Below are positions 43,884-51,626 of a DNA stretch of 64,000 nucleotides, piece after piece. The position numbers and the translations under genes were made by a program. The notes beneath the pieces are model-generated. The model had not been told where the DNA came from. It saw nothing but the letters and a program-made list of their open reading frames with translations, and did not search any database. The stretch's first letter is position 1; every line of letters starts with the position of its first letter. The stretch is taken from positions 186,001-250,000 of IMG/VR virus record IMGVR_UViG_3300044972_002389, one strand, 5' to 3'.

Positions 43884-45860
43884 ATGAATACAAATATCAC
43901 AAAGACCAATGGCACTACGCTGGCAAGTATTCCGCCAGGACAGTATAACAGCACAGTTTCCAGTTTGATCCTATTTGGTAAGAATTTTGCCAATTACGGT
44001 ACTTATTTGAATGAAAATCTTGTTCATCTCATGGAAAATTTTGCCGACCAAAGTCCTCCACAAAGTCCCACACAAGGACAGCTTTGGTACAAAACCACAG
44101 ACAAACAAATGTATGTTTGGGAAGGCAGTGTTTGGAAACTGCTAAATGCAGAAAGCCTGCAACAGATTGCTGATGCAATTGTTAAAAATCGCATTTACGT
44201 TGCAGAAAGTGGTAATGATACCAACAGTGGACAAAGTTGGTATAGCGCCAAGCGAACTGTGAAAGCTGCATGTGCTGAAGCAGCTAGACAAATTGCCACA
44301 GGTGCATTCCGACCTGATCACACAGCTATATTAGTAGCAGCTGGTGACTATACTGAAGACTGTCCTATTGAAATTCCGCCAGGTGTCAGCATTATTGGCG
44401 ATAATCTTAGAGCTGTTTCCATACGACCAAGAGTCGCAACTACTGATGTATTTTATTTGAACAGCAAGTGTTATGTGTATGGCATTACTGTAAGAGATCA
44501 TAGATTGAATCCATCAGCATTGGATATAACTCCAGCAGGTTATGCCAACACAAGTGGAGTGAATACATCTGCACTGATCTCTACAACTCGACAAACAGGA
44601 TTTGCCTTTGGCTTTGCTCCAGGTGCAGACATCTTGGTCAGTCCCTATGTACAAAACTGTTCCAGCATTAGTGGCGATCCAGACACTGGATCAGGGATTT
44701 ACCCAGGTGGTGGCGGTGTGTTGATTGATCCCAGTGTTTTGGGACCCAATAATAGGATTCACAGCATTGTTATTGACGCATTTACTCAAATCAATCTTGG
44801 TGGTATCGGCGTCAAAGTCATTGGCAAAGGCTACATGCAGTTGGTGAGTTTTTTCGTTAACTTCTGCCAGTTTGGCTTGCTGTGCCTTGATGGTGGTCAC
44901 GTGACTGCATTGAACAGCAATTGCAGTTTTGGCAATTATGCTCTTTGGAGTCAAGGACACCGGTATCTTGAAACCACTGACAGCCCTGTGGCTGTAAATC
45001 AAACTTGGGCCACCAATGGTGTCAGTTCTGATTTTGTCACAACGGGTGGCACTTATGTTTTGCCAAATCAATTCAGTGACTTGGAAGTGCAATTTTTAGA
45101 CACTGCAACACCGTTGCTGCCCACTGTTGACTATACAATATCAAAAGGTGTAACAGCGGGTGGTTTGCCTTGTTCAGTTATTAGCTTGAAGTCTTTGCCC
45201 ATAGCTGGCCGGCAATTGCGAGCCAGGATCAAGTTTGGCTCCTTGATTGAAGCCAGCGGCTATACCATGAGCTATGCTGGTGCTGGCTTGGATTATGCCA
45301 AACTCAGCCCCAGTCAAGATGGCAGTGGCTACGCTGATCCCAACAAATATACTATTGCACTAGCTGGTGGACGTGTATTCCATACCACAACTGACGAAAG
45401 CGGAGACTTTTATGTGGGGGCTGTGACACCCAATCCAGCGTTTCAAGTTGGCGGATTGACTATTGCCAATGGCGGAGGCAGCTATAACGTAGGGGATACA
45501 TTGAATTTCATTACCCCAGCCAACGTTAACAGCACCTATGCTGTGCCCACAACACTTAAGGTTTTGAGTGTGTCCAGTGGTGTTATTACAAGTGTTGCGA
45601 TTCTTATTCCTGGATACTATCTACTTTCGGCGCCAGGTAGCACAACAATTGGCAGTTTGCCCACAAATCCCATTAGTGCAACGTCAACAAGTGGTGGTGG
45701 ATCGTCAGCTACTTTTAACTTCGTGTGGGAGAAACCTCCTGCCAGACCCAGTTTCCGCATAAATCAGAGACGAGGTGCTATTGATGGACGCAGCTTTTAT
45801 CAAAGCATCTTTGGATTTATGACTCCCTTTATACTTGCTCTTTCACGCAAAGGATCTTAA
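43884..45860 (+). CDS. virion structural protein (tail fibre/baseplate) with beta-helix domain
   Basis: L.L.GKN..NYG...NEN.VHLMENFA...P..P..GQLWY head; IYVA..G.D.N.G; GDNLR; SPYVQNCS; DAFTQIN. Confidence 0.75.
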   Translation: MNTNITKTNGTTLASIPPGQYNSTVSSLILFGKNFANYGTYLNENLVHLMENFADQSPPQSPTQGQLWYKTTDKQMYVWEGSVWKLLNAESLQQIADAIVKNRIYVAESGNDTNSGQSWYSAKRTVKAACAEAARQIATGAFRPDHTAILVAAGDYTEDCPIEIPPGVSIIGDNLRAVSIRPRVATTDVFYLNSKCYVYGITVRDHRLNPSALDITPAGYANTSGVNTSALISTTRQTGFAFGFAPGADILVSPYVQNCSSISGDPDTGSGIYPGGGGVLIDPSVLGPNNRIHSIVIDAFTQINLGGIGVKVIGKGYMQLVSFFVNFCQFGLLCLDGGHVTALNSNCSFGNYALWSQGHRYLETTDSPVAVNQTWATNGVSSDFVTTGGTYVLPNQFSDLEVQFLDTATPLLPTVDYTISKGVTAGGLPCSVISLKSLPIAGRQLRARIKFGSLIEASGYTMSYAGAGLDYAKLSPSQDGSGYADPNKYTIALAGGRVFHTTTDESGDFYVGAVTPNPAFQVGGLTIANGGGSYNVGDTLNFITPANVNSTYAVPTTLKVLSVSSGVITSVAILIPGYYLLSAPGSTTIGSLPTNPISATSTSGGGSSATFNFVWEKPPARPSFRINQRRGAIDGRSFYQSIFGFMTPFILALSRKGS

Positions 45861-45863
45861 CAT

Positions 45864-46334
45864 ATGCCTGCACCTATTTTTAACTTTCGTAATGTCAAAG
45901 TTAGAGTTACAAATGATCAACCCACAACCATTTACAAAGTTTCAAGTTACGATCAAACTATTCCCAACACAACATTGCCTCCAGGTGTAGATCCAACTGA
46001 AGTCAGTATTGTGTTGTTGACTGTTCAATGCAGCAACATTACAGGCAGTCCCAGCAGTCCTACTCTACGGAAAACCATCAATCTCAGTGTATGGATTGAT
46101 AATCCTCCTGATCCAGCCTATCTGCCCACTGGTAGACGTTACCTTGTTAACAATTACACAATTATTCCCAACAACGCTTTTGACCCCTTGAATGGCAATT
46201 TGATCATGAGCAGCGGAGATACCTTGGTTGTACAAGTAAGTAATCCTCCAGCAGAAACAACCAATACCAGTACTGATAACTGTGTTGATGTTGTTGTAAG
46301 CCTATTGGAAATTGCCAATGCGACTGCCAATTAA
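45864..46334 (+). CDS. hypothetical virion protein
   Basis: In the late operon; beta-rich. Confidence 0.65.
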   Translation: MPAPIFNFRNVKVRVTNDQPTTIYKVSSYDQTIPNTTLPPGVDPTEVSIVLLTVQCSNITGSPSSPTLRKTINLSVWIDNPPDPAYLPTGRRYLVNNYTIIPNNAFDPLNGNLIMSSGDTLVVQVSNPPAETTNTSTDNCVDVVVSLLEIANATAN

Positions 46335-46343
46335 GGACTAAGC

Positions 46344-46898
46344 ATGCCAAAGCTACTTGATAACCGCGTTGTTGGATCAGCTGATCTTATTGATGTGCAA
46401 CTGGAAGGTGTTCCAGCTGGCTTGGTATTGAAAGTCTCTGCCAACGGAGAGCAATTCTTTTTTGGGCAACAAATTGGACCACCTGGACCTCCAGGTATTA
46501 TTGGCACAGCAGGGAGCCCTGGCCCTCAAGGACCACCAGGAGATGACACATTTGTTGTTGGTCCACCTGGGCCTCCTGGTCCTCCTGGTATGGGAGGGGG
46601 AATTCCTGGAAGCCCAGGAGTTCAAGGACCTCCAGGTCCAAACAAAGGCCCGCCAGGCGATCAAGGACCCAATGGTGATACTGGGCCAACAGGACCACAA
46701 ATAACTGATCAACAACATTATGCAGCAGTTTTCAGCACTGCTGGTCCACAAACATGGACAGCGCCACCTGGTGTTAGGCGTGCTAGAATAACACTGATCG
46801 GTGGAGGGGCTGGGGGAACGTTGGGCATTTATGTGCCTCCAGGTTCAGTTCCACCTACAGAAGGTGGCCCTGGGGCTGGCGGCGGAGGACTATTTTGA
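46344..46898 (+). CDS. collagen-like fibre protein, N-terminal part
   Basis: MPKLLDNR head, Gly-X-Y repeats, start of glycine-rich domain (WTAPPGV...ITLIGGG). Confidence 0.8.
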
Positions 46899-47024
46899 TT
46901 ACCATAAGTAGTAACAGAGTCGTAGCATAAGACAGCCATTGTCTATTATAGGGATTTAAGGCTATGCAACGCTGGGACTAAACAGTTGGGGTGTAACAAT
47001 GGATAGCTATAGAGGATTACTGTT

Positions 47025-47405
47025 ATGAGTGGAAGCATTGGCGGATGGTTTACTGGCCTGGCTGGAGGCTCTGGAGCAATTTTACGGCTGTGGGTAGATA
47101 TAATCCCAAATGCCACCTATAATCTTCAAGTTGGTGCTGGAGGTCAAGGGCAAACATCTGCCACAGTTCCTCCAACAAATGGAGGCAACACTACTATGAG
47201 CGGACCAGGTGGAGTATTTTATTCTGCTGGAGGCGGCGTAGCAGTGAGTGGAGGCAATGCAGGCACGACACCAAACATAATTTGGCCCTTGGTACCTGGA
47301 TCATATCTCCATGGTTTGGCAGGTGCAGGAGGCGATCCCACTAAGCCAAATCCTGCAGGGTCAAATGGCTCAGCTGGCCTTATTTTGATTGAATGGATTA
47401 ACTAA
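47025..47405 (+). CDS. collagen-like fibre protein, C-terminal part of the glycine-rich domain
   Basis: Same frame as 46344-46898; ends GLILIEW like its paralogs; GAGGA RBS. Confidence 0.75.
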
Positions 47406-48334
47406 TGCCTCGCTTACTTGATAACCGTATTGTTGGCCCATCACGAGACGTTTTGACTACAACATTATATGGGGCACCTGCCGGGTATGTGTTACGAGTA
47501 TCCCCCACAGGAGATACACTTGTGGTCACAACCCCAGGTGGCCCACTGGGTCCTCCAGGTCCTCCTGGCCCCGCTGGACTAGCAGGGCCTGTTGGGCCAC
47601 CTGGAGCCAGCAGTGCATTAGTAGGTGATACAGGTCCCCCAGGTCCTCCTGGTCCTGCAGGAGGACCTCCTGGTCCTGCAGGTTTAACTGGACCAACGGG
47701 ACCAGGCGGGGGACCAGTGGGTCCTCCAGGACCGCCTGGAATTACTGGACCTATTGGGCCGCCTAGTGGCAATCAAGATATAAATGCAGCACAACTTGTG
47801 TCTCCTGGTGTATGGACAGCACCCCCAGGTGTGTTTTCTGTTAAGCTGACACTTATTGGAGCAGGGGGAGGCGGTAGTTTGCCCGTGAGTGGGGGTAGTC
47901 CAATTGAATTTGACAATAGTGCTCAATCTGGTTGGACAATACAAGGTATTCCTGGAAGCAGTGGTGGCGTAAATGAACAATGGGTAACTGTGCAGGGCGG
48001 ACAAAATTACAATGTCACAATAGGAGTTGGGGGTAGTGGAGCTATAATATCTGGAGGTGGGGTGTACCCCAATGAAAATAATATTCCAACATATTACCCA
48101 CAATATATATACGTTCCACCAAGTCCTGGCACCCCTACAACATGGAGTGGTCCAGGCAGTCCCACAGTCGTAGCAGGCGGCGGCCCATCAGCAGGCACCC
48201 CCGCAGGAATTCTGGGTACTCCTGGAGTGAATTCCCCCTTAAGTGTGGGATTGGGTGTGGCAACAGTCTATGGATTTGGGGCAGGAGCAGAACAACAGGG
48301 CGGCCCTGGTGCAGCACTTATAGAATGGATTTAA
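47405..48334 (+). CDS. collagen-like fibre protein with glycine-rich C-terminal domain
   Basis: MPRLLDNR head, GPP repeats, ends GAALIEW. Confidence 0.85.
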
Positions 48335-48337
48335 AAG

Positions 48338-49273
48338 ATGCCAAAACTTCTTGATAAGCGTATAATAGGCGGGTCTGCAGACGTCCTGAATACAATACTG
48401 ATTGGTGTGCCTGCTGGGTTGCCCCTTATAGTGGCGCCAACAGGCGCCGCTTTGCTGTTGGGTCCAGCCACAAGTTTTCCAGGCGTAAGGGGGCCTACAG
48501 GGCCTACAGGATTGGGAGGAGCGCCAGGATTTGGTGGATTTCCTGCCCCTCCAGGTGTAAAAGGTGCCACTGGGTCTGCTGGGCAGCCTGGCCCATTAGC
48601 AGGACCACCAGGCACACTAGGGGCAACCGGGCCAGTAGGTGGCGCTGGCCCGACCGGAGACCCAGGGGCAACAGGAACTCTTGGTTTTCCAGGACCCCAA
48701 GGGACAGGCCAAAAATTAGCAGTAGCTGGCTTTTTGTCTCCCAGTACATGGGCTGTGCCTGCTACAACTACTAATGTAAAAATCACAACTGTGGGCGGAG
48801 GAGGAGCAGGTGGTTGGGGAGCAATTTATACAACACAGGATTACACAGGTGCTGACGGCGGCTATGCTGATGGTCCCACTATAAAACTAATTGGAGGCAA
48901 GGGTGGACCAGGTGCCGCTATAGAAACATGGATACCGGTCACGGCAGGCAGTAATTTGCAAGTAATAGTTGGAGGTGGTGGGGCTGCTAACATTAGTAAT
49001 TCTGGAAACCCTGGCACGCCCAGCCAACTTTTGGATCAAAGTGGAATAGCCCTTGTTACAGCAGGTGGTGGAAGCGGCGGCCTCAATGCCAACATCTTCA
49101 CACCCGGTGCCAATGGTGCGAGAGGAACTGCCACCAGCATAGGCCCGCTGGTTTACTTGAATGCTGACTTAGGCCTTAGGTTTGGTTACGGGGGCGTGGG
49201 CCGAGACGATACATCAGCATCAGGTGGACAACCAGGTGCAGTTCTTATAGAATATGTTGCTGTAGGTCCTTAA
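48338..49273 (+). CDS. collagen-like fibre protein with glycine-rich C-terminal domain
   Basis: MPKLLDKR head, Gly-X-Y repeats, ends GAVLIEY. Confidence 0.85.
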
Positions 49274-49878
49274 CGCAGTGCTGGACCAGTTAACCAAGCC
49301 ACCAAAGTGCGGCGTAACCCACTTGTAACGGGTGTTACTCTATGCAGAACAAAGCTGGGAAAAACGGCTACAAGGCCTAGATCCTTGCTAATGGTTTGTG
49401 GATCAGCGCCTAACTTAACTTGTAGATTGCCACCTTCATACTCACAGGGATCGCTCAATTGTAAAACTACACTGAGTTTTCGAGGACCGTGGTTTGTGGA
49501 AGTGATGCCACTGTCAATATGCCAGGTGTAGTGACCCTCATCATCCCCGTAGTATTCAGTGTATTGCAGGTGTTCACCAAATCCCCACAAATCAAAGCGA
49601 AAATGCTGGCCATTTAAATTACGAACAATATTACCCAAGCGTTGATAAATCCAATCAGTGTCAGGACTGGCTTCAATCCAACTGGTTTTGCTTTTGCGTA
49701 TTTGTTCATAATTTTGAGCGGGATCAAATCCACCAATTACCGCTTTTCCTGGCTGTCTAGCCTGCCCTAGTTGAATTATCTTTTTTATATCATCTCCTGA
49801 AAATCCATCTTTCCAGGTTGCTACGTTTGCCTCACCAGCGCCAAAGCTGGGACTTGGTAAAAATTGATAAATTGACAC
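49270..49878 (-). CDS. 2OG-Fe(II) oxygenase (prolyl 4-hydroxylase / PKHD-type)
   Basis: [30 protein letters not shown]; GGAG RBS before GTG 49878. Confidence 0.88.
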
Positions 49879-49940
49879 TCTGTTGCTCCCTTTGATTTGA
49901 ACTATACAAGGGCCTTTGTTTCTCTGCAATAAATAGATTT

Positions 49941-50264: not shown

Positions 50265-51626
50265 ATGGCTAATAGCAAGCTGTTGAAGGTAATGGATTAC
50301 CTTATCAACGAGCAAGAAGACAAGGCTCGTGACCTGTTGCACCAAATCTTCATTGAGAAGGCACGTGCAATTCACGAGGAAATGCTAAGTGACGACGAGC
50401 ATGAAATGGACAGGGACGAGGGCAGAAATCTCGGAGATGACATTGAATTTCACAAAGAAGAAATTGAGAATGAAGAGCATTATGGCGACGGCACAATGGA
50501 AGATGTTGACCTCGATGACGCGGTTGAAGATCTCACAGTAAGTGCTGGCGATGATGAAGATGCTGACGATGTTGATGTTGACGTGGAAGACGATGACATA
50601 GACATGGACGCTGAAGACGACATGGACGATGAAGACGACATGGACGATGAAGAAATGGATGCTGATGAAGCTGAAATGGATGCAGACATGGACCACGACG
50701 AGGAAGCTGAAGGCGAGCGTCTAAAAGACATTGAGCAAGCAATTGAAGAGTTGACTGCTGAATTTGAAGCTATGAAGGCTGAACTACATGGTGAACATGG
50801 TGATGCAGAGGGAGATAAAATGCCCCTGCAGGAAATGGCAGATTCGGGCACTACGCCTGGTGGTAAACAGTACAAAATTAGCGGCGATTTTGAAACCGTG
50901 ACTGTTAATGGAACTTCTTACCCAATCCGCAAACTGAGTGGTCAAGGGGACAACCCCGACTACGTAATAGATGACATCCATATTGGTCAAACATATCAGG
51001 ACATGCCACACCCTGACGCGGATGAGGAAGACTATGAGGAAGAATATGAAGTCTGGACAGAAGCACCAGGACAAGCAGATAACACCCTACACGTTGGTAC
51101 GTGGGATGAGTGCTGGAACTTTTTAATTGATCAACTAGGAAGTGAAGACCATTCGCGTTTGAAAAGACGCCTACAGCGCGATGCTAGCGGTGGTGGCATG
51201 AGAGAAGGCTGGATGGACAACACTGACGACCTTGATGAAGACTATGATGATCTTGATGAAGCCATTGCCCTCGATACAGTTCATGTTGATCTCAAGAAAG
51301 TTGGCGAAGTTGGCTCAGGAAAGTTTTCTCGTAGTGATGTAAGCAAGCATAGCCCAGTGCCCAAAGGCGTTCAAAGCCCTGTTCCAGGTGCCAAGCCAGT
51401 TGTGACAGGCAAGGGATCAAAGGCTGATGGATATCATCTTCAATCTGCCCCCACAAGTGCCAGTATGAACTTGTCCAACCGTCGCAAGAAGGCTAGTGAA
51501 GACATGACTCATGTCAGCAAGGAAGGCAGCACAAAGGCCATGTTGAACAAAGATCGTTCAGAAGGTTTTGGCGCCGCCAACGTTCGCAGCCCACTGGGCA
51601 GCACCGGCACAACACCAAAGAAGTAA
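50265..51626 (+). CDS. acidic prohead core protein
   Basis: LINE...KA..L.H.IFIEKAR.I.E head, D/E-rich linker, upstream of the protease; TAAATA at 50221; AAGGAG RBS. Confidence 0.7.
   Translation: MANSKLLKVMDYLINEQEDKARDLLHQIFIEKARAIHEEMLSDDEHEMDRDEGRNLGDDIEFHKEEIENEEHYGDGTMEDVDLDDAVEDLTVSAGDDEDADDVDVDVEDDDIDMDAEDDMDDEDDMDDEEMDADEAEMDADMDHDEEAEGERLKDIEQAIEELTAEFEAMKAELHGEHGDAEGDKMPLQEMADSGTTPGGKQYKISGDFETVTVNGTSYPIRKLSGQGDNPDYVIDDIHIGQTYQDMPHPDADEEDYEEEYEVWTEAPGQADNTLHVGTWDECWNFLIDQLGSEDHSRLKRRLQRDASGGGMREGWMDNTDDLDEDYDDLDEAIALDTVHVDLKKVGEVGSGKFSRSDVSKHSPVPKGVQSPVPGAKPVVTGKGSKADGYHLQSAPTSASMNLSNRRKKASEDMTHVSKEGSTKAMLNKDRSEGFGAANVRSPLGSTGTTPKK

What the first reader, a model, noticed from the sequence alone, without database searches (positions are those of the whole stretch)
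46860..47060. Collagen fibre gene interrupted in frame by a structured 126-nt spacer: bypass, intron or true split gene
Seen: 46344-46898 (184 aa) and 47025-47405 (126 aa) are in the same frame and together match the intact neighbouring paralogs (309 and 311 aa). The break falls inside the glycine-rich domain. The gap has several in-frame stops and pairings (CGTAGCATA/TATGCAACG, AGACA/TGTCT, and CCATTGT with distal ACAATGG). The codon before the stop is TTT (GGC GGA GGA CTA TTT TGA) and a matching in-frame GGC GGA TGG TTT lies at about 47040-47051. Joining TTT to TTT gives ...[13 protein letters not shown], the same loop length as the 48338 paralog. Known: T4 gene 60 ribosomal hopping uses matched take-off and landing codons next to a stop. 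Against this, a GAGGA RBS precedes ATG 47025, so two separate chains are also plausible.
Basis: partly seen in the sequence, partly recalled or inferred. Interest (0 to 1): 0.65.

Follow-up and report, generated by a model that had tools for sequence, protein, structure and literature searches.

The report
Conserved two-gene split tail-fibre head
The "interrupted" collagen-like fibre gene of this lake jumbo phage is an old, conserved split into two separately translated genes whose products probably reassemble into one receptor-binding head; it shows no sign of ribosome hopping or an intron, and the 126-nt spacer is strain-specific filler.

Summary
The sequence facts are confirmed. ORF 46344-46898 (184 aa) and ORF 47025-47405 (126 aa) are in frame, 126 nt apart, and together match the intact paralogs. 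The bypass and intron readings fail.

- **The split is conserved.** At least nine related lineages carry it (ORF2 identity down to 44-45%). The junction varies: 126, 94, 93, 39, 24, 20, 16 and 15 nt gaps, or a 4-nt overlap.
- **Frame and codon match are chance.** Relative frames in six lineages are 0, 1, 0, 2, 2, 1. The TTT/TTT pair occurs only in the window.
- **ORF2 starts on its own.** Six lineages read (window and L015 share the same stretch) show a Shine-Dalgarno-like motif 7-8 nt before a start codon.
- **Both ORFs are under selection.** dN/dS is at most about 0.35.
- **The spacer is not special.** It folds no better than shuffles, matches no Rfam family, is unique to its strain and is replaced by unrelated sequence in a 95-100% identical sister strain.
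- **It is real DNA.** Contigs of three lake-metagenome runs and five IMG/VR contigs carry it unchanged.
- **The head fold.** It resembles the TNF-like plus glycine-rich head of the cyanophage Pam3 fibre, and the break lies in a hypervariable loop.
- **The two pieces are predicted to bind.** Score 0.78 against 0.00 for the best control.

A naturally split fibre head is a modest novelty.

The parts
46344..46898 (+). ORF1, 184 aa. It holds the N-terminal domain (MPKLLDNR...), a collagen-like G-X-Y region (aa 45-119), the first strands of the head domain (to about aa 168) and a variable Gly-rich tail.
   Evidence: (PF01391 19.6 bits, below the cut-off). Orthologues of 183-213 aa end at the same place.
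46868..46980 (+). Strain-specific segment: the ORF1 tail codons, the stop and the 5' part of the spacer. In sister strains L015 and L051 it is replaced by unrelated sequence.
   Evidence: Alignments A2 and A8. The identity profile is 54-66% here against 95-100% in the flanks. The core 30-mer occurs only in the five same-strain contigs of IMG/VR.
46899..47024 (+). 126-nt intergenic spacer, 40% G+C, single copy in the genome.
   Evidence: There is no Rfam match in or next to the gap.
46981..47024 (+). 3' part of the spacer, shared with L015 and L051. It contains the Shine-Dalgarno GAGGA at 47012-47016, 8 nt before the ATG.
47025..47405 (+). ORF2, 126 aa: the C-terminal two thirds of the TNF-like/glycine-rich head (MSGSIGG...LILIEWIN). 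Its stop overlaps the start of paralog 2 (TAATG).
47405..48334 (+). Intact paralog 2 (309 aa): collagen-like region plus a complete head.
   Evidence: AF2 model of the head, pLDDT 85. Foldseek hits to 7ypx, 9d93 and ALK GRD chains.
48338..49273 (+). Intact paralog 3 (311 aa).
   Evidence: PF21722 Gly_rich_2, 22.0 bits against a cut-off of 24.3.
49270..49929 (-). 2OG-Fe(II) oxygenase, convergent with the fibre genes and conserved next to them in relatives.
   Evidence: PF13640, E 5e-14.
43884..46334 (+). Upstream conserved genes: a 658-aa tail fibre protein and a 156-aa protein. The gene order is the same in all relatives.

Best explanation
The first of three tandem collagen-like fibre genes of this roughly 330-kb lake phage is a genuine, long-standing split gene. 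ORF1 gives a chain with the N-terminal domain, the collagen-like stalk and the first beta-strands of the TNF-like/glycine-rich head, and it ends in a dispensable, variable Gly-rich tail. ORF2 is translated from its own Shine-Dalgarno site and start codon and supplies the rest of the head. The two chains then co-fold without a covalent link into a head like that of the intact paralogs (inferred). The break lies in a hypervariable surface loop. The 126-nt spacer is non-conserved intergenic DNA that arose by segment replacement at this junction. It is not a recoding signal or an intron.

Shown: the conserved split, the independent start signals, purifying selection, and the lack of conservation of the spacer.

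Inferred: separate translation, and assembly of the two chains.
For: **The split is conserved**
- It is present in every lineage found. Gaps are 126, 94, 93, 39, 24, 20, 16 and 15 nt, or a 4-nt overlap.
- Relative frames in six lineages are 0, 1, 0, 2, 2, 1.
- Each of the six lineages read (window and L015 share the same stretch) has an SD-like GGAG, AGGAG, GAGGA or AAGGA 7-8 nt before an ATG or GTG, and six of the seven lineages read begin MSG[ST][IV]G (L036 begins MTVFAG).

**No unsplit orthologue was seen**
- Proteins 67-98% identical to ORF1 are 192-213 aa long. The 286-316 aa hits (49-52% identical) are paralog-2 orthologues.
- Stand-alone ORF2 homologues of 124-134 aa reach down to 45% identity.

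**Both ORFs are under selection**
- pS is 0.60-0.78 (saturated) against pN 0.17-0.42 between the diverged lineages. dN/dS is 0.08-0.35 where it can be computed.

**The spacer carries no signal**
- Folding z-scores are -0.49 and -0.11.
- Rfam gives nothing.
- The spacer is single copy in the genome and confined to its own strain in IMG/VR.
- In a 95-100% identical sister strain, 113 nt are replaced by unrelated sequence.

**The DNA is real**
- Contigs of three lake-metagenome runs and five IMG/VR contigs carry it unchanged, with no joints.

**Structure**
- The AF2 model of the paralog-2 head has pLDDT 85. The break maps to its least confident N-terminal loop, blocks 41-60, pLDDT 66-73.
- The best Foldseek hits are the cyanophage Pam3 fibre 7ypx, Bxb1 tail-tip chains and ALK/LTK glycine-rich domains.
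- ORF1(120-184) with ORF2 scores ipSAE 0.78 against 0.00 for the best of 3 controls. That mark was reached by 58 of 80 solved complexes and 2 of 110 mismatched pairs. The runs agree in at least 93% of contacts, and the partner's pLDDT is at least 84.
- In that model the ORF1 strand ITLIG pairs with the ORF2 strands ILRLW and LILIEW.
Against: - There are no RNA, ribosome or protein data: no listed run is on record as RNA. Separate translation and assembly are therefore inferred.
- The complex score uses my own shallow alignments (10 and 8 rows). It may partly reflect the model's memory of single-chain homologues, so it shows likeness more than binding.
- In L018 a single in-frame TAA and 15 nt separate the ORFs, so some read-through fusion there cannot be excluded.
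Confidence: 0.82

Rival explanations
1. Programmed translational bypass of the T4 gene 60 type. The ribosome takes off at TTT 46893-46895 before the UGA, slides 153 nt and lands on TTT 47049-47051, giving one fused chain of about 300 aa.
For: In the window there is a matched TTT on both sides, with a stop right after the first. The ORFs are in frame, and the joined loop would be 35 residues, as in paralog 3.
Against: - The matched codon is absent in all five other lineages: GAG, GAT, ACA, GGT and GCA have no in-frame match in the first 15 ORF2 codons.
- The hop would be 153 nt, against about 50 nt in the known cassettes (10.1101/2022.08.31.505936).
- There is no local take-off stem-loop: 46893-46910 is unpaired in the MFE fold.
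- A premature TTT at 46955 would lead into a stop.
- The gene is still split where the gap is only 15-39 nt or absent, and the downstream piece always has its own SD and start codon.
Confidence: 0.03
2. A small intron or other RNA-level excision removes the 126 nt.
For: Only the in-frame arrangement and some short pairings in the gap support it.
Against: - No Rfam intron family matches, even at E up to 10.
- 126 nt is well below the usual group I or II size (general knowledge).
- The gap is no more structured than shuffles.
- The sequence is not conserved in the sister strain, where the ORFs are out of frame.
- Other lineages have no insert, yet the gene is still split.
Confidence: 0.01
3. A decaying pseudogene: a recent nonsense or indel lesion, with the fragments no longer functional.
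For: In-frame stops lie inside what is a single domain in the paralogs.
Against: - The same split persists across lineages whose synonymous sites are saturated. Both pieces stay open with dN/dS of 0.08-0.35.
- The ORF2 start and SD are conserved.
- The ORF2 stop stays coupled to the start of the next gene.
- The two pieces are predicted to complement each other.
Confidence: 0.04
4. Two separate proteins that do not reassemble. ORF1 would form a truncated fibre, and ORF2 would work on its own, for example as an assembly factor or decoy.
For: Fibre genes are often followed by small assembly or chaperone genes, such as Pam3 gp25 (PMC9608196). No binding has been measured.
Against: - ORF2 is homologous to the C-terminal part of the head of the paralogs, not to a Tfa-type chaperone.
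- In the model the central ORF1 strand is sandwiched between the first and last ORF2 strands, with about 340 contacts, so neither piece looks able to fold alone.
Confidence: 0.08
5. An assembly or sequencing artefact, or read-through under another genetic code.
For: None beyond the oddity of the gap.
Against: - The sequence is identical in five IMG/VR contigs and in contigs of three lake-metagenome runs from separate samples and studies.
- The gap holds TGA, TAA and TAG in frame, so no single reassignment opens it.
- No tRNA gene was found in the window.
Confidence: 0.01

Closest known systems
Cyanophage Pam3 tail fibre gp24 (PDB 7YPX/7YFW; PMC9608196) and the ALK/LTK TNF-like plus glycine-rich ('TG') domains
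   Same: The head of paralog 2 gives these as the best Foldseek matches (prob 1.0, E 3e-4 to 1e-3, TM 0.37-0.50). Shared sequence features are GGGGxGG-type motifs and a variable loop region. The paper describes hypervariable distal tips that bind the receptor.
   Different: The stalk here is collagen-like rather than alpha-helical. Sequence identity is only 16-20%. In the first paralog the head is encoded by two genes, whereas Pam3 gp24 is one chain with a separate chaperone, gp25.
Aeromonas phage Aeh1 split ribonucleotide reductase NrdA-a/NrdA-b ('genes in pieces'; PMC3045599)
   Same: A phage gene is broken inside a domain into two separately translated ORFs whose products reassemble. Extra tail sequences sit at the new C- and N-termini.
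   Different: In Aeh1 the break was made by a mobile endonuclease gene (mobE) that is still present, and assembly was shown biochemically. Here no mobile gene lies at the junction in any lineage, the gaps are -4 to 126 nt, and assembly is only predicted.
T4 gene 60 translational bypass cassette (10.1101/2022.08.31.505936)
   Same: A stop follows a codon that recurs downstream, and an SD-like motif lies in the gap.
   Different: The distance is 153 nt rather than about 50. There is no take-off stem-loop, and a premature landing triplet is present. Nothing is conserved in relatives, and the downstream piece has its own conserved start.
Salmonella phage S16 gp37/gp38 adhesin (PDB 6F45, as cited in PMC9608196)
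   Same: A glycine-rich receptor-binding tip is carried on a polypeptide separate from the fibre shaft.
   Different: gp38 is a complete domain that docks onto gp37. Here a single domain is cut through its fold.
Collagen-like phage and prophage fibre proteins (Pfam PF01391; e.g. PMC3368898)
   Same: G-X-Y repeats lie in tail-fibre genes, and there are PHROG tail-fibre hits.
   Different: The repeat stretches are short (4-8 triplets) and score below Pfam's cut-off. There are three tandem paralogs next to a 2OG-Fe(II) oxygenase.

Membership tests
T4 gene 60-type bypass cassette | Matched take-off and landing codons, conserved among relatives | tested here: not met
   TTT/TTT occurs in the window only. 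Five other lineages have no in-frame match in the first 15 ORF2 codons.
T4 gene 60-type bypass cassette | Stop or slow codon directly after the take-off codon | tested here: met
   TTT TGA at 46893-46898. This is trivially true of any ORF end.
T4 gene 60-type bypass cassette | Local stem-loop with the take-off codon in its 5' arm | tested here: not met
   46893-46910 is unpaired in the MFE and centroid folds, z = -0.49.
T4 gene 60-type bypass cassette | Gap of about 50 nt, free of premature landing triplets, with a mini-SD 5-7 nt before the landing codon | tested here: not met
   The gap is 153 nt. TTT at 46955 leads into a stop. The nearest GGA ends 3 nt before TTT 47049.
T4 gene 60-type bypass cassette | Nascent-peptide signal upstream of the take-off | not testable with these tools
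   There is no model for such a signal outside topoisomerase. The ORF1 tail is hypervariable among relatives.
Self-splicing intron (group I/II) | Match to an intron covariance model, conserved core structure | tested here: not met
   Rfam at E up to 10 gives nothing in or next to the gap. The fold is no better than shuffles. The sequence is replaced in the sister strain.
TNF-like + glycine-rich (TG) fibre head / Pfam Gly_rich_2 (PF21722) | Sequence match to PF21722 | tested here: inconclusive
   Paralog 3 scores 22.0 bits against a cut-off of 24.3. Precomputed PF21722 hits are on record for ORF2 orthologues P0004, P0006 and P0007.
TNF-like + glycine-rich (TG) fibre head / Pfam Gly_rich_2 (PF21722) | Fold similarity to solved TG domains | tested here: met
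   The model has pLDDT 85. The top hits are 7ypx_A, 9d93 Qa/Qb, 7lir and 7nx1, prob 0.9-1.0, though TM is only 0.35-0.50.
Collagen triple-helix repeat (PF01391) | Uninterrupted G-X-Y repeats, Pfam match | tested here: inconclusive
   G-X-Y runs of 8, 5, 4 and 6 triplets lie in ORF1. Pfam gives 19.6 bits against a cut-off of 27.2.
Genes-in-pieces split protein (Aeh1 NrdA-a/b type) | Two ORFs, each with its own start signals, both conserved under selection | tested here: met
Genes-in-pieces split protein (Aeh1 NrdA-a/b type) | The products assemble into the functional unit | tested here: inconclusive
   This is a prediction only: ipSAE 0.78 against 0.00 for the best control. No experiment exists.
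Genes-in-pieces split protein (Aeh1 NrdA-a/b type) | A mobile endonuclease gene at the break | tested here: not met
   Gaps of -4 to 126 nt hold no ORF in any lineage.

The most novel reading that the evidence does not exclude
ORF1, paralog 2 and paralog 3 have G-X-Y blocks and interruptions in register. They may form one heterotrimeric collagen-like fibre whose head is a pseudo-trimer of TG domains. One of these domains would be deliberately split, so that its loop-rich C-terminal piece (ORF2) is a separately made, exchangeable specificity subunit. The junction would then serve as a recombination hotspot for swapping host range.
Probability: 0.12. Interest if true: 0.55.

Novelty: new variant of a known kind. 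Interest (0 to 1): 0.3.

Why it matters
The finding removes a tempting candidate for a second natural family of ribosome hopping. In-frame halves with a matched codon can arise by chance, and comparison with relatives settles the question.

What remains is a naturally split TNF-like/glycine-rich receptor-binding domain. It has been kept as two genes across deep divergence, and it is cut in the loop that varies most between strains. If the two chains do reassemble, this is a natural example of fragment complementation in a phage fibre head. It also marks a permissive site for engineering or swapping specificity modules. It is of moderate interest to people who work on phage structure and host range, and it is not a new mechanism.

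Tried and rejected
- **Rfam.** A scan of 45000-49500 at E up to 10 gave only chance miRNA and lncRNA hits outside the gap.
- **Promoter and terminator scan.** Counts were no higher than in shuffles, and nothing lay in the gap.
- **Annotated phage records.** blastn of the region found only a 64-nt collagen-repeat hit.
- **Dispersed element.** The gap is single copy in the 328-kb genome. Its core 30-mer, and the hairpin of L015, occur only in their own strains in IMG/VR.
- **Alternative genetic code.** Rejected, because all three stop codons occur in frame in the gap.
- **Frameshift fusion.** In the window, L015 and L018 a stop closes ORF2's frame between the ORF1 stop and the ORF2 start. I saw no slippery heptamer at the L019 overlap by eye.
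- **RNA evidence.** No listed run is on record as RNA, and the contigs laid cannot show transcripts.
- **Degenerate-tail origin.** I considered that the spacer is a decayed remainder of a longer Gly-rich ORF1 tail. I rejected this by eye: the spacer has 40% G+C and no GGN periodicity.
- **Searches not run.** The large profile search (search of protein representatives) was not used, because the family scans and word searches did not leave the protein open.
- **Joined sequence.** The joined 'hop' product was never sent to a search or a fold. Both pieces were searched and folded separately by reference, and only the loop length of the joined form was counted in a script.

Full report
**Context**

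The window is bases 186001-250000 of a 328,603-bp IMG/VR virus record, estimated 77% complete. The runs that hold the stretch are all lake-water metagenomes.

The finding lies in a structural gene block:
- portal (phrog_213);
- a 658-aa tail-fibre protein;
- a conserved 156-aa protein;
- three tandem collagen-like fibre paralogs;
- a convergent 2OG-Fe(II) oxygenase;
- further on, the head protease.

**The observation**

The sequence facts hold.
- ORF1 (46344-46898, 184 aa) and ORF2 (47025-47405, 126 aa) share a frame and lie 126 nt apart.
- In that frame the stops are TGA, TAA, TAG, TAG, TAG.
- Together the two ORFs align along the whole length of paralog 2 (309 aa) and paralog 3 (311 aa). The break falls after the [10 protein letters not shown] strand of the glycine-rich head.
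- The TTT-TGA end of ORF1, the downstream GGC GGA TGG TTT, and GAGGA 8 nt before the ATG are all as described.

The word 'structured' does not hold.
- The gap folds no better than dinucleotide shuffles: z = -0.49, with 60 of 200 shuffles folding as well, and z = -0.11 in the wider context.
- One of the listed pairings has a central mismatch, and two of them exclude each other.

**Relatives decide the question**

I searched ORF1, ORF2 and the upstream 156-aa protein separately in IMG/VR, in JGI metagenome contigs and in the clustered protein collection. I then fetched the contexts. Every lineage has the same gene order and the same split.

| Lineage | Gap between ORF1 and ORF2 | Relative frame |
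|---|---|---|
| window type | 126 nt | 0 |
| L015 type (95-100% identical over the 6-kb fibre locus outside the junction and two paralog-2 loop stretches) | 94 nt | 1 |
| L051 | 93 nt | not determined |
| contig of P0002 | 39 nt | not determined |
| L046 | 24 nt | not determined |
| L035 | 20 nt | 2 |
| L036 | 16 nt | 1 |
| L018/L050 | 15 nt | 0 |
| L019/L020/L047-49 | 4-nt ATGA overlap | 2 |

- The shared frame in the window is therefore the 1 in 3 outcome.
- The last sense codon of ORF1 differs in each lineage (TTT, GAG, GAT, ACA, GGT, GCA). Only the window has a matching in-frame codon early in ORF2.
- Every lineage read has an SD-like motif 7-8 nt before an ATG or GTG, and ORF2 usually begins MSG[ST][IV]G.
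- Every ORF2 stop overlaps the start of paralog 2 (TAATG or TGATG), which suits translational coupling within an operon.
- Proteins 67-98% identical to ORF1 are all 192-213 aa long. The 286-316 aa hits, at 49-52% identity, carry the paralog-2 N-terminus. No unsplit orthologue was seen, within the limits of the word-based searches.

**Not a pseudogene, not an artefact**

- Between the diverged lineages synonymous sites are saturated (pS 0.60-0.78) while pN is 0.17-0.42.
- Where dS can be computed, dN/dS is 0.08-0.23 for ORF1 and 0.18-0.35 for ORF2.
- The gap stands unchanged in five IMG/VR contigs and in Logan contigs of three runs from separate samples and studies, with no joint or deleted form. 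In a fourth run the contigs break just before the junction (no piece laid on 46801-46903), as expected where strains are mixed.

**What the spacer is**

- Against sister strain L015 the 6-kb fibre locus is 95-100% identical in most 100-nt windows (two further windows score 89% and 91%). The lowest values are at 46844-47030 (54-66%) and in two loop-coding stretches of paralog 2.
- In the window, 46868-46980 (the ORF1 tail, the stop and the 5' spacer) is replaced wholesale in L015 and L051.
- The last 44 nt, which include the SD, are shared.
- The L015 and L051 version has an 11-bp hairpin that starts at the stop codon (z = -2.0). Between the two strains it shows one compensatory G-C to A-U change.
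- The L015 and L051 version also carries a relic ORF2 start. ATGAGCGGAACAGTTGG matches the L018 ORF2 start at 15 of 17 positions, and 0 of 20,000 shuffles reach that.
- I infer repeated segment replacement at this junction, which left untranslated remnants.
- Neither spacer core occurs outside its own strain in IMG/VR, and the window's spacer is single copy in the genome. It is therefore not a dispersed mobile element.

**How it probably works**

- An AlphaFold2 model of the paralog-2 head has mean pLDDT 85 and pTM 0.77.
- Its best solved matches are the cyanophage Pam3 fibre (7ypx), Bxb1 tail-tip chains (9d93 Qa/Qb) and the ALK/LTK TNF-like plus glycine-rich domains. Foldseek gives prob 1.0 and E 3e-4 to 1e-3, but TM is only 0.37-0.50. 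The same fold class is described in PMC9608196.
- The break maps to the least confident loop of the N-terminal part of the model, residues 41-60, pLDDT 66-73.
- The equivalent loop of intact paralog 2 (47831-47918) is itself the most variable stretch of that gene between strains.
- ORF1(120-184) with ORF2 gave ipSAE 0.78, 0.78 and 0.77, against 0.00 for the best of three controls. That mark was reached by 58 of 80 solved complexes and 2 of 110 mismatched pairs. The runs agree in at least 93% of contacts, and the partner's pLDDT is at least 84.
- In that model the ORF1 strand ITLIG pairs with the first (ILRLW) and last (LILIEW) strands of ORF2. The variable ORF1 tail (residues 169-184) is not named among the confident interface residues, which the tool says is no evidence that it does not touch.
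- This supports co-folding of the two chains into one head, but does not prove it. The alignments were my own and shallow, and single-chain homologues may be in the model's memory.

**Comparison with known systems**

- The window fails the defining features of gene 60-type bypass listed in 10.1101/2022.08.31.505936. It lacks conserved matched codons, a take-off stem-loop, a gap of about 50 nt free of premature landing triplets, and a correctly spaced mini-SD.
- No intron family matches.
- The nearest functional analogue is the 'genes in pieces' NrdA-a/NrdA-b of phage Aeh1 (PMC3045599). The difference is that no homing endonuclease gene sits at this break in any lineage.
- The nearest structural relatives are the TG-type fibre heads. 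Here the head is on a collagen-like stalk and, in one paralog, is encoded by two genes.

**Verdict**

- The bypass and intron readings are not supported.
- A conserved split through a receptor-binding domain is a modest novelty: a new variant of known kinds.

Noticed in passing
window 49270-49929 (-): A 2OG-Fe(II) oxygenase (PF13640, E 5e-14) lies convergent to the three collagen-like genes and keeps that position in all relatives. It is a candidate prolyl hydroxylase acting on the fibres.
   Followed up: partly
window 46344-49273: The G-X-Y blocks and their interruptions are in register in ORF1 (aa 45-68, 73-87, 89-100, 102-119), paralog 2 (46-69, 74-88, 90-104, 106-120) and paralog 3 (49-69, 73-87, 89-124). 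This would fit a heterotrimeric triple helix as well as plain paralogy.
   Followed up: no
window 47831-47918 and 48119-48215: Against the 95-100% identical sister strain L015, these two head-loop stretches of paralog 2 drop to 75% (with indels) and 82% identity. The first is the loop equivalent to the split site. Variant contigs at 47866-47956 appear in run X15.
   Followed up: partly
L015 4567-4594; L051 about 770-800: An 11-bp hairpin (GTAACCGGGGC-TAG-GCCCCGGTTAC) starts at the ORF1 stop in the sister strains. Between L015 and L051 it shows one compensatory G-C to A-U change, one G.U pair and one mismatch. No T-run follows it, and its function is unknown.
   Followed up: partly
L015 4617-4640: A relic ORF2 start, ATGAGCGGAACAGTTGG followed by a stop after 7 codons, lies 51 nt upstream of the working ATG. 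It matches the L018 ORF2 start at 15 of 17 positions, and 0 of 20,000 shuffles reach that.
   Followed up: yes
L045 (NCBI MAG contig JBJKNK010003250.1): In this L019-type contig ORF1 and paralog 2 are further fragmented (166+116 aa and 138+184 aa), while ORF2 is intact. Assembly indels in the repeats are the likely cause.
   Followed up: no
window 47398-47772 (-) and 48331-48786 (-): Long antisense ORFs (124 and 151 aa, Gly/Pro-rich) lie opposite the collagen-like regions. This is expected from GGN/CCN repeats and is not evidence of genes.
   Followed up: no
window 50265-51626 (+): A 453-aa protein with a very acidic D/E-rich middle lies just upstream of the head maturation protease (phrog_207). 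Next comes a 401-aa phrog_10922 protein in the position where a capsid gene would be expected.
   Followed up: no
window 1-64000: ARAGORN found no tRNA gene in the 64-kb window.
   Followed up: yes
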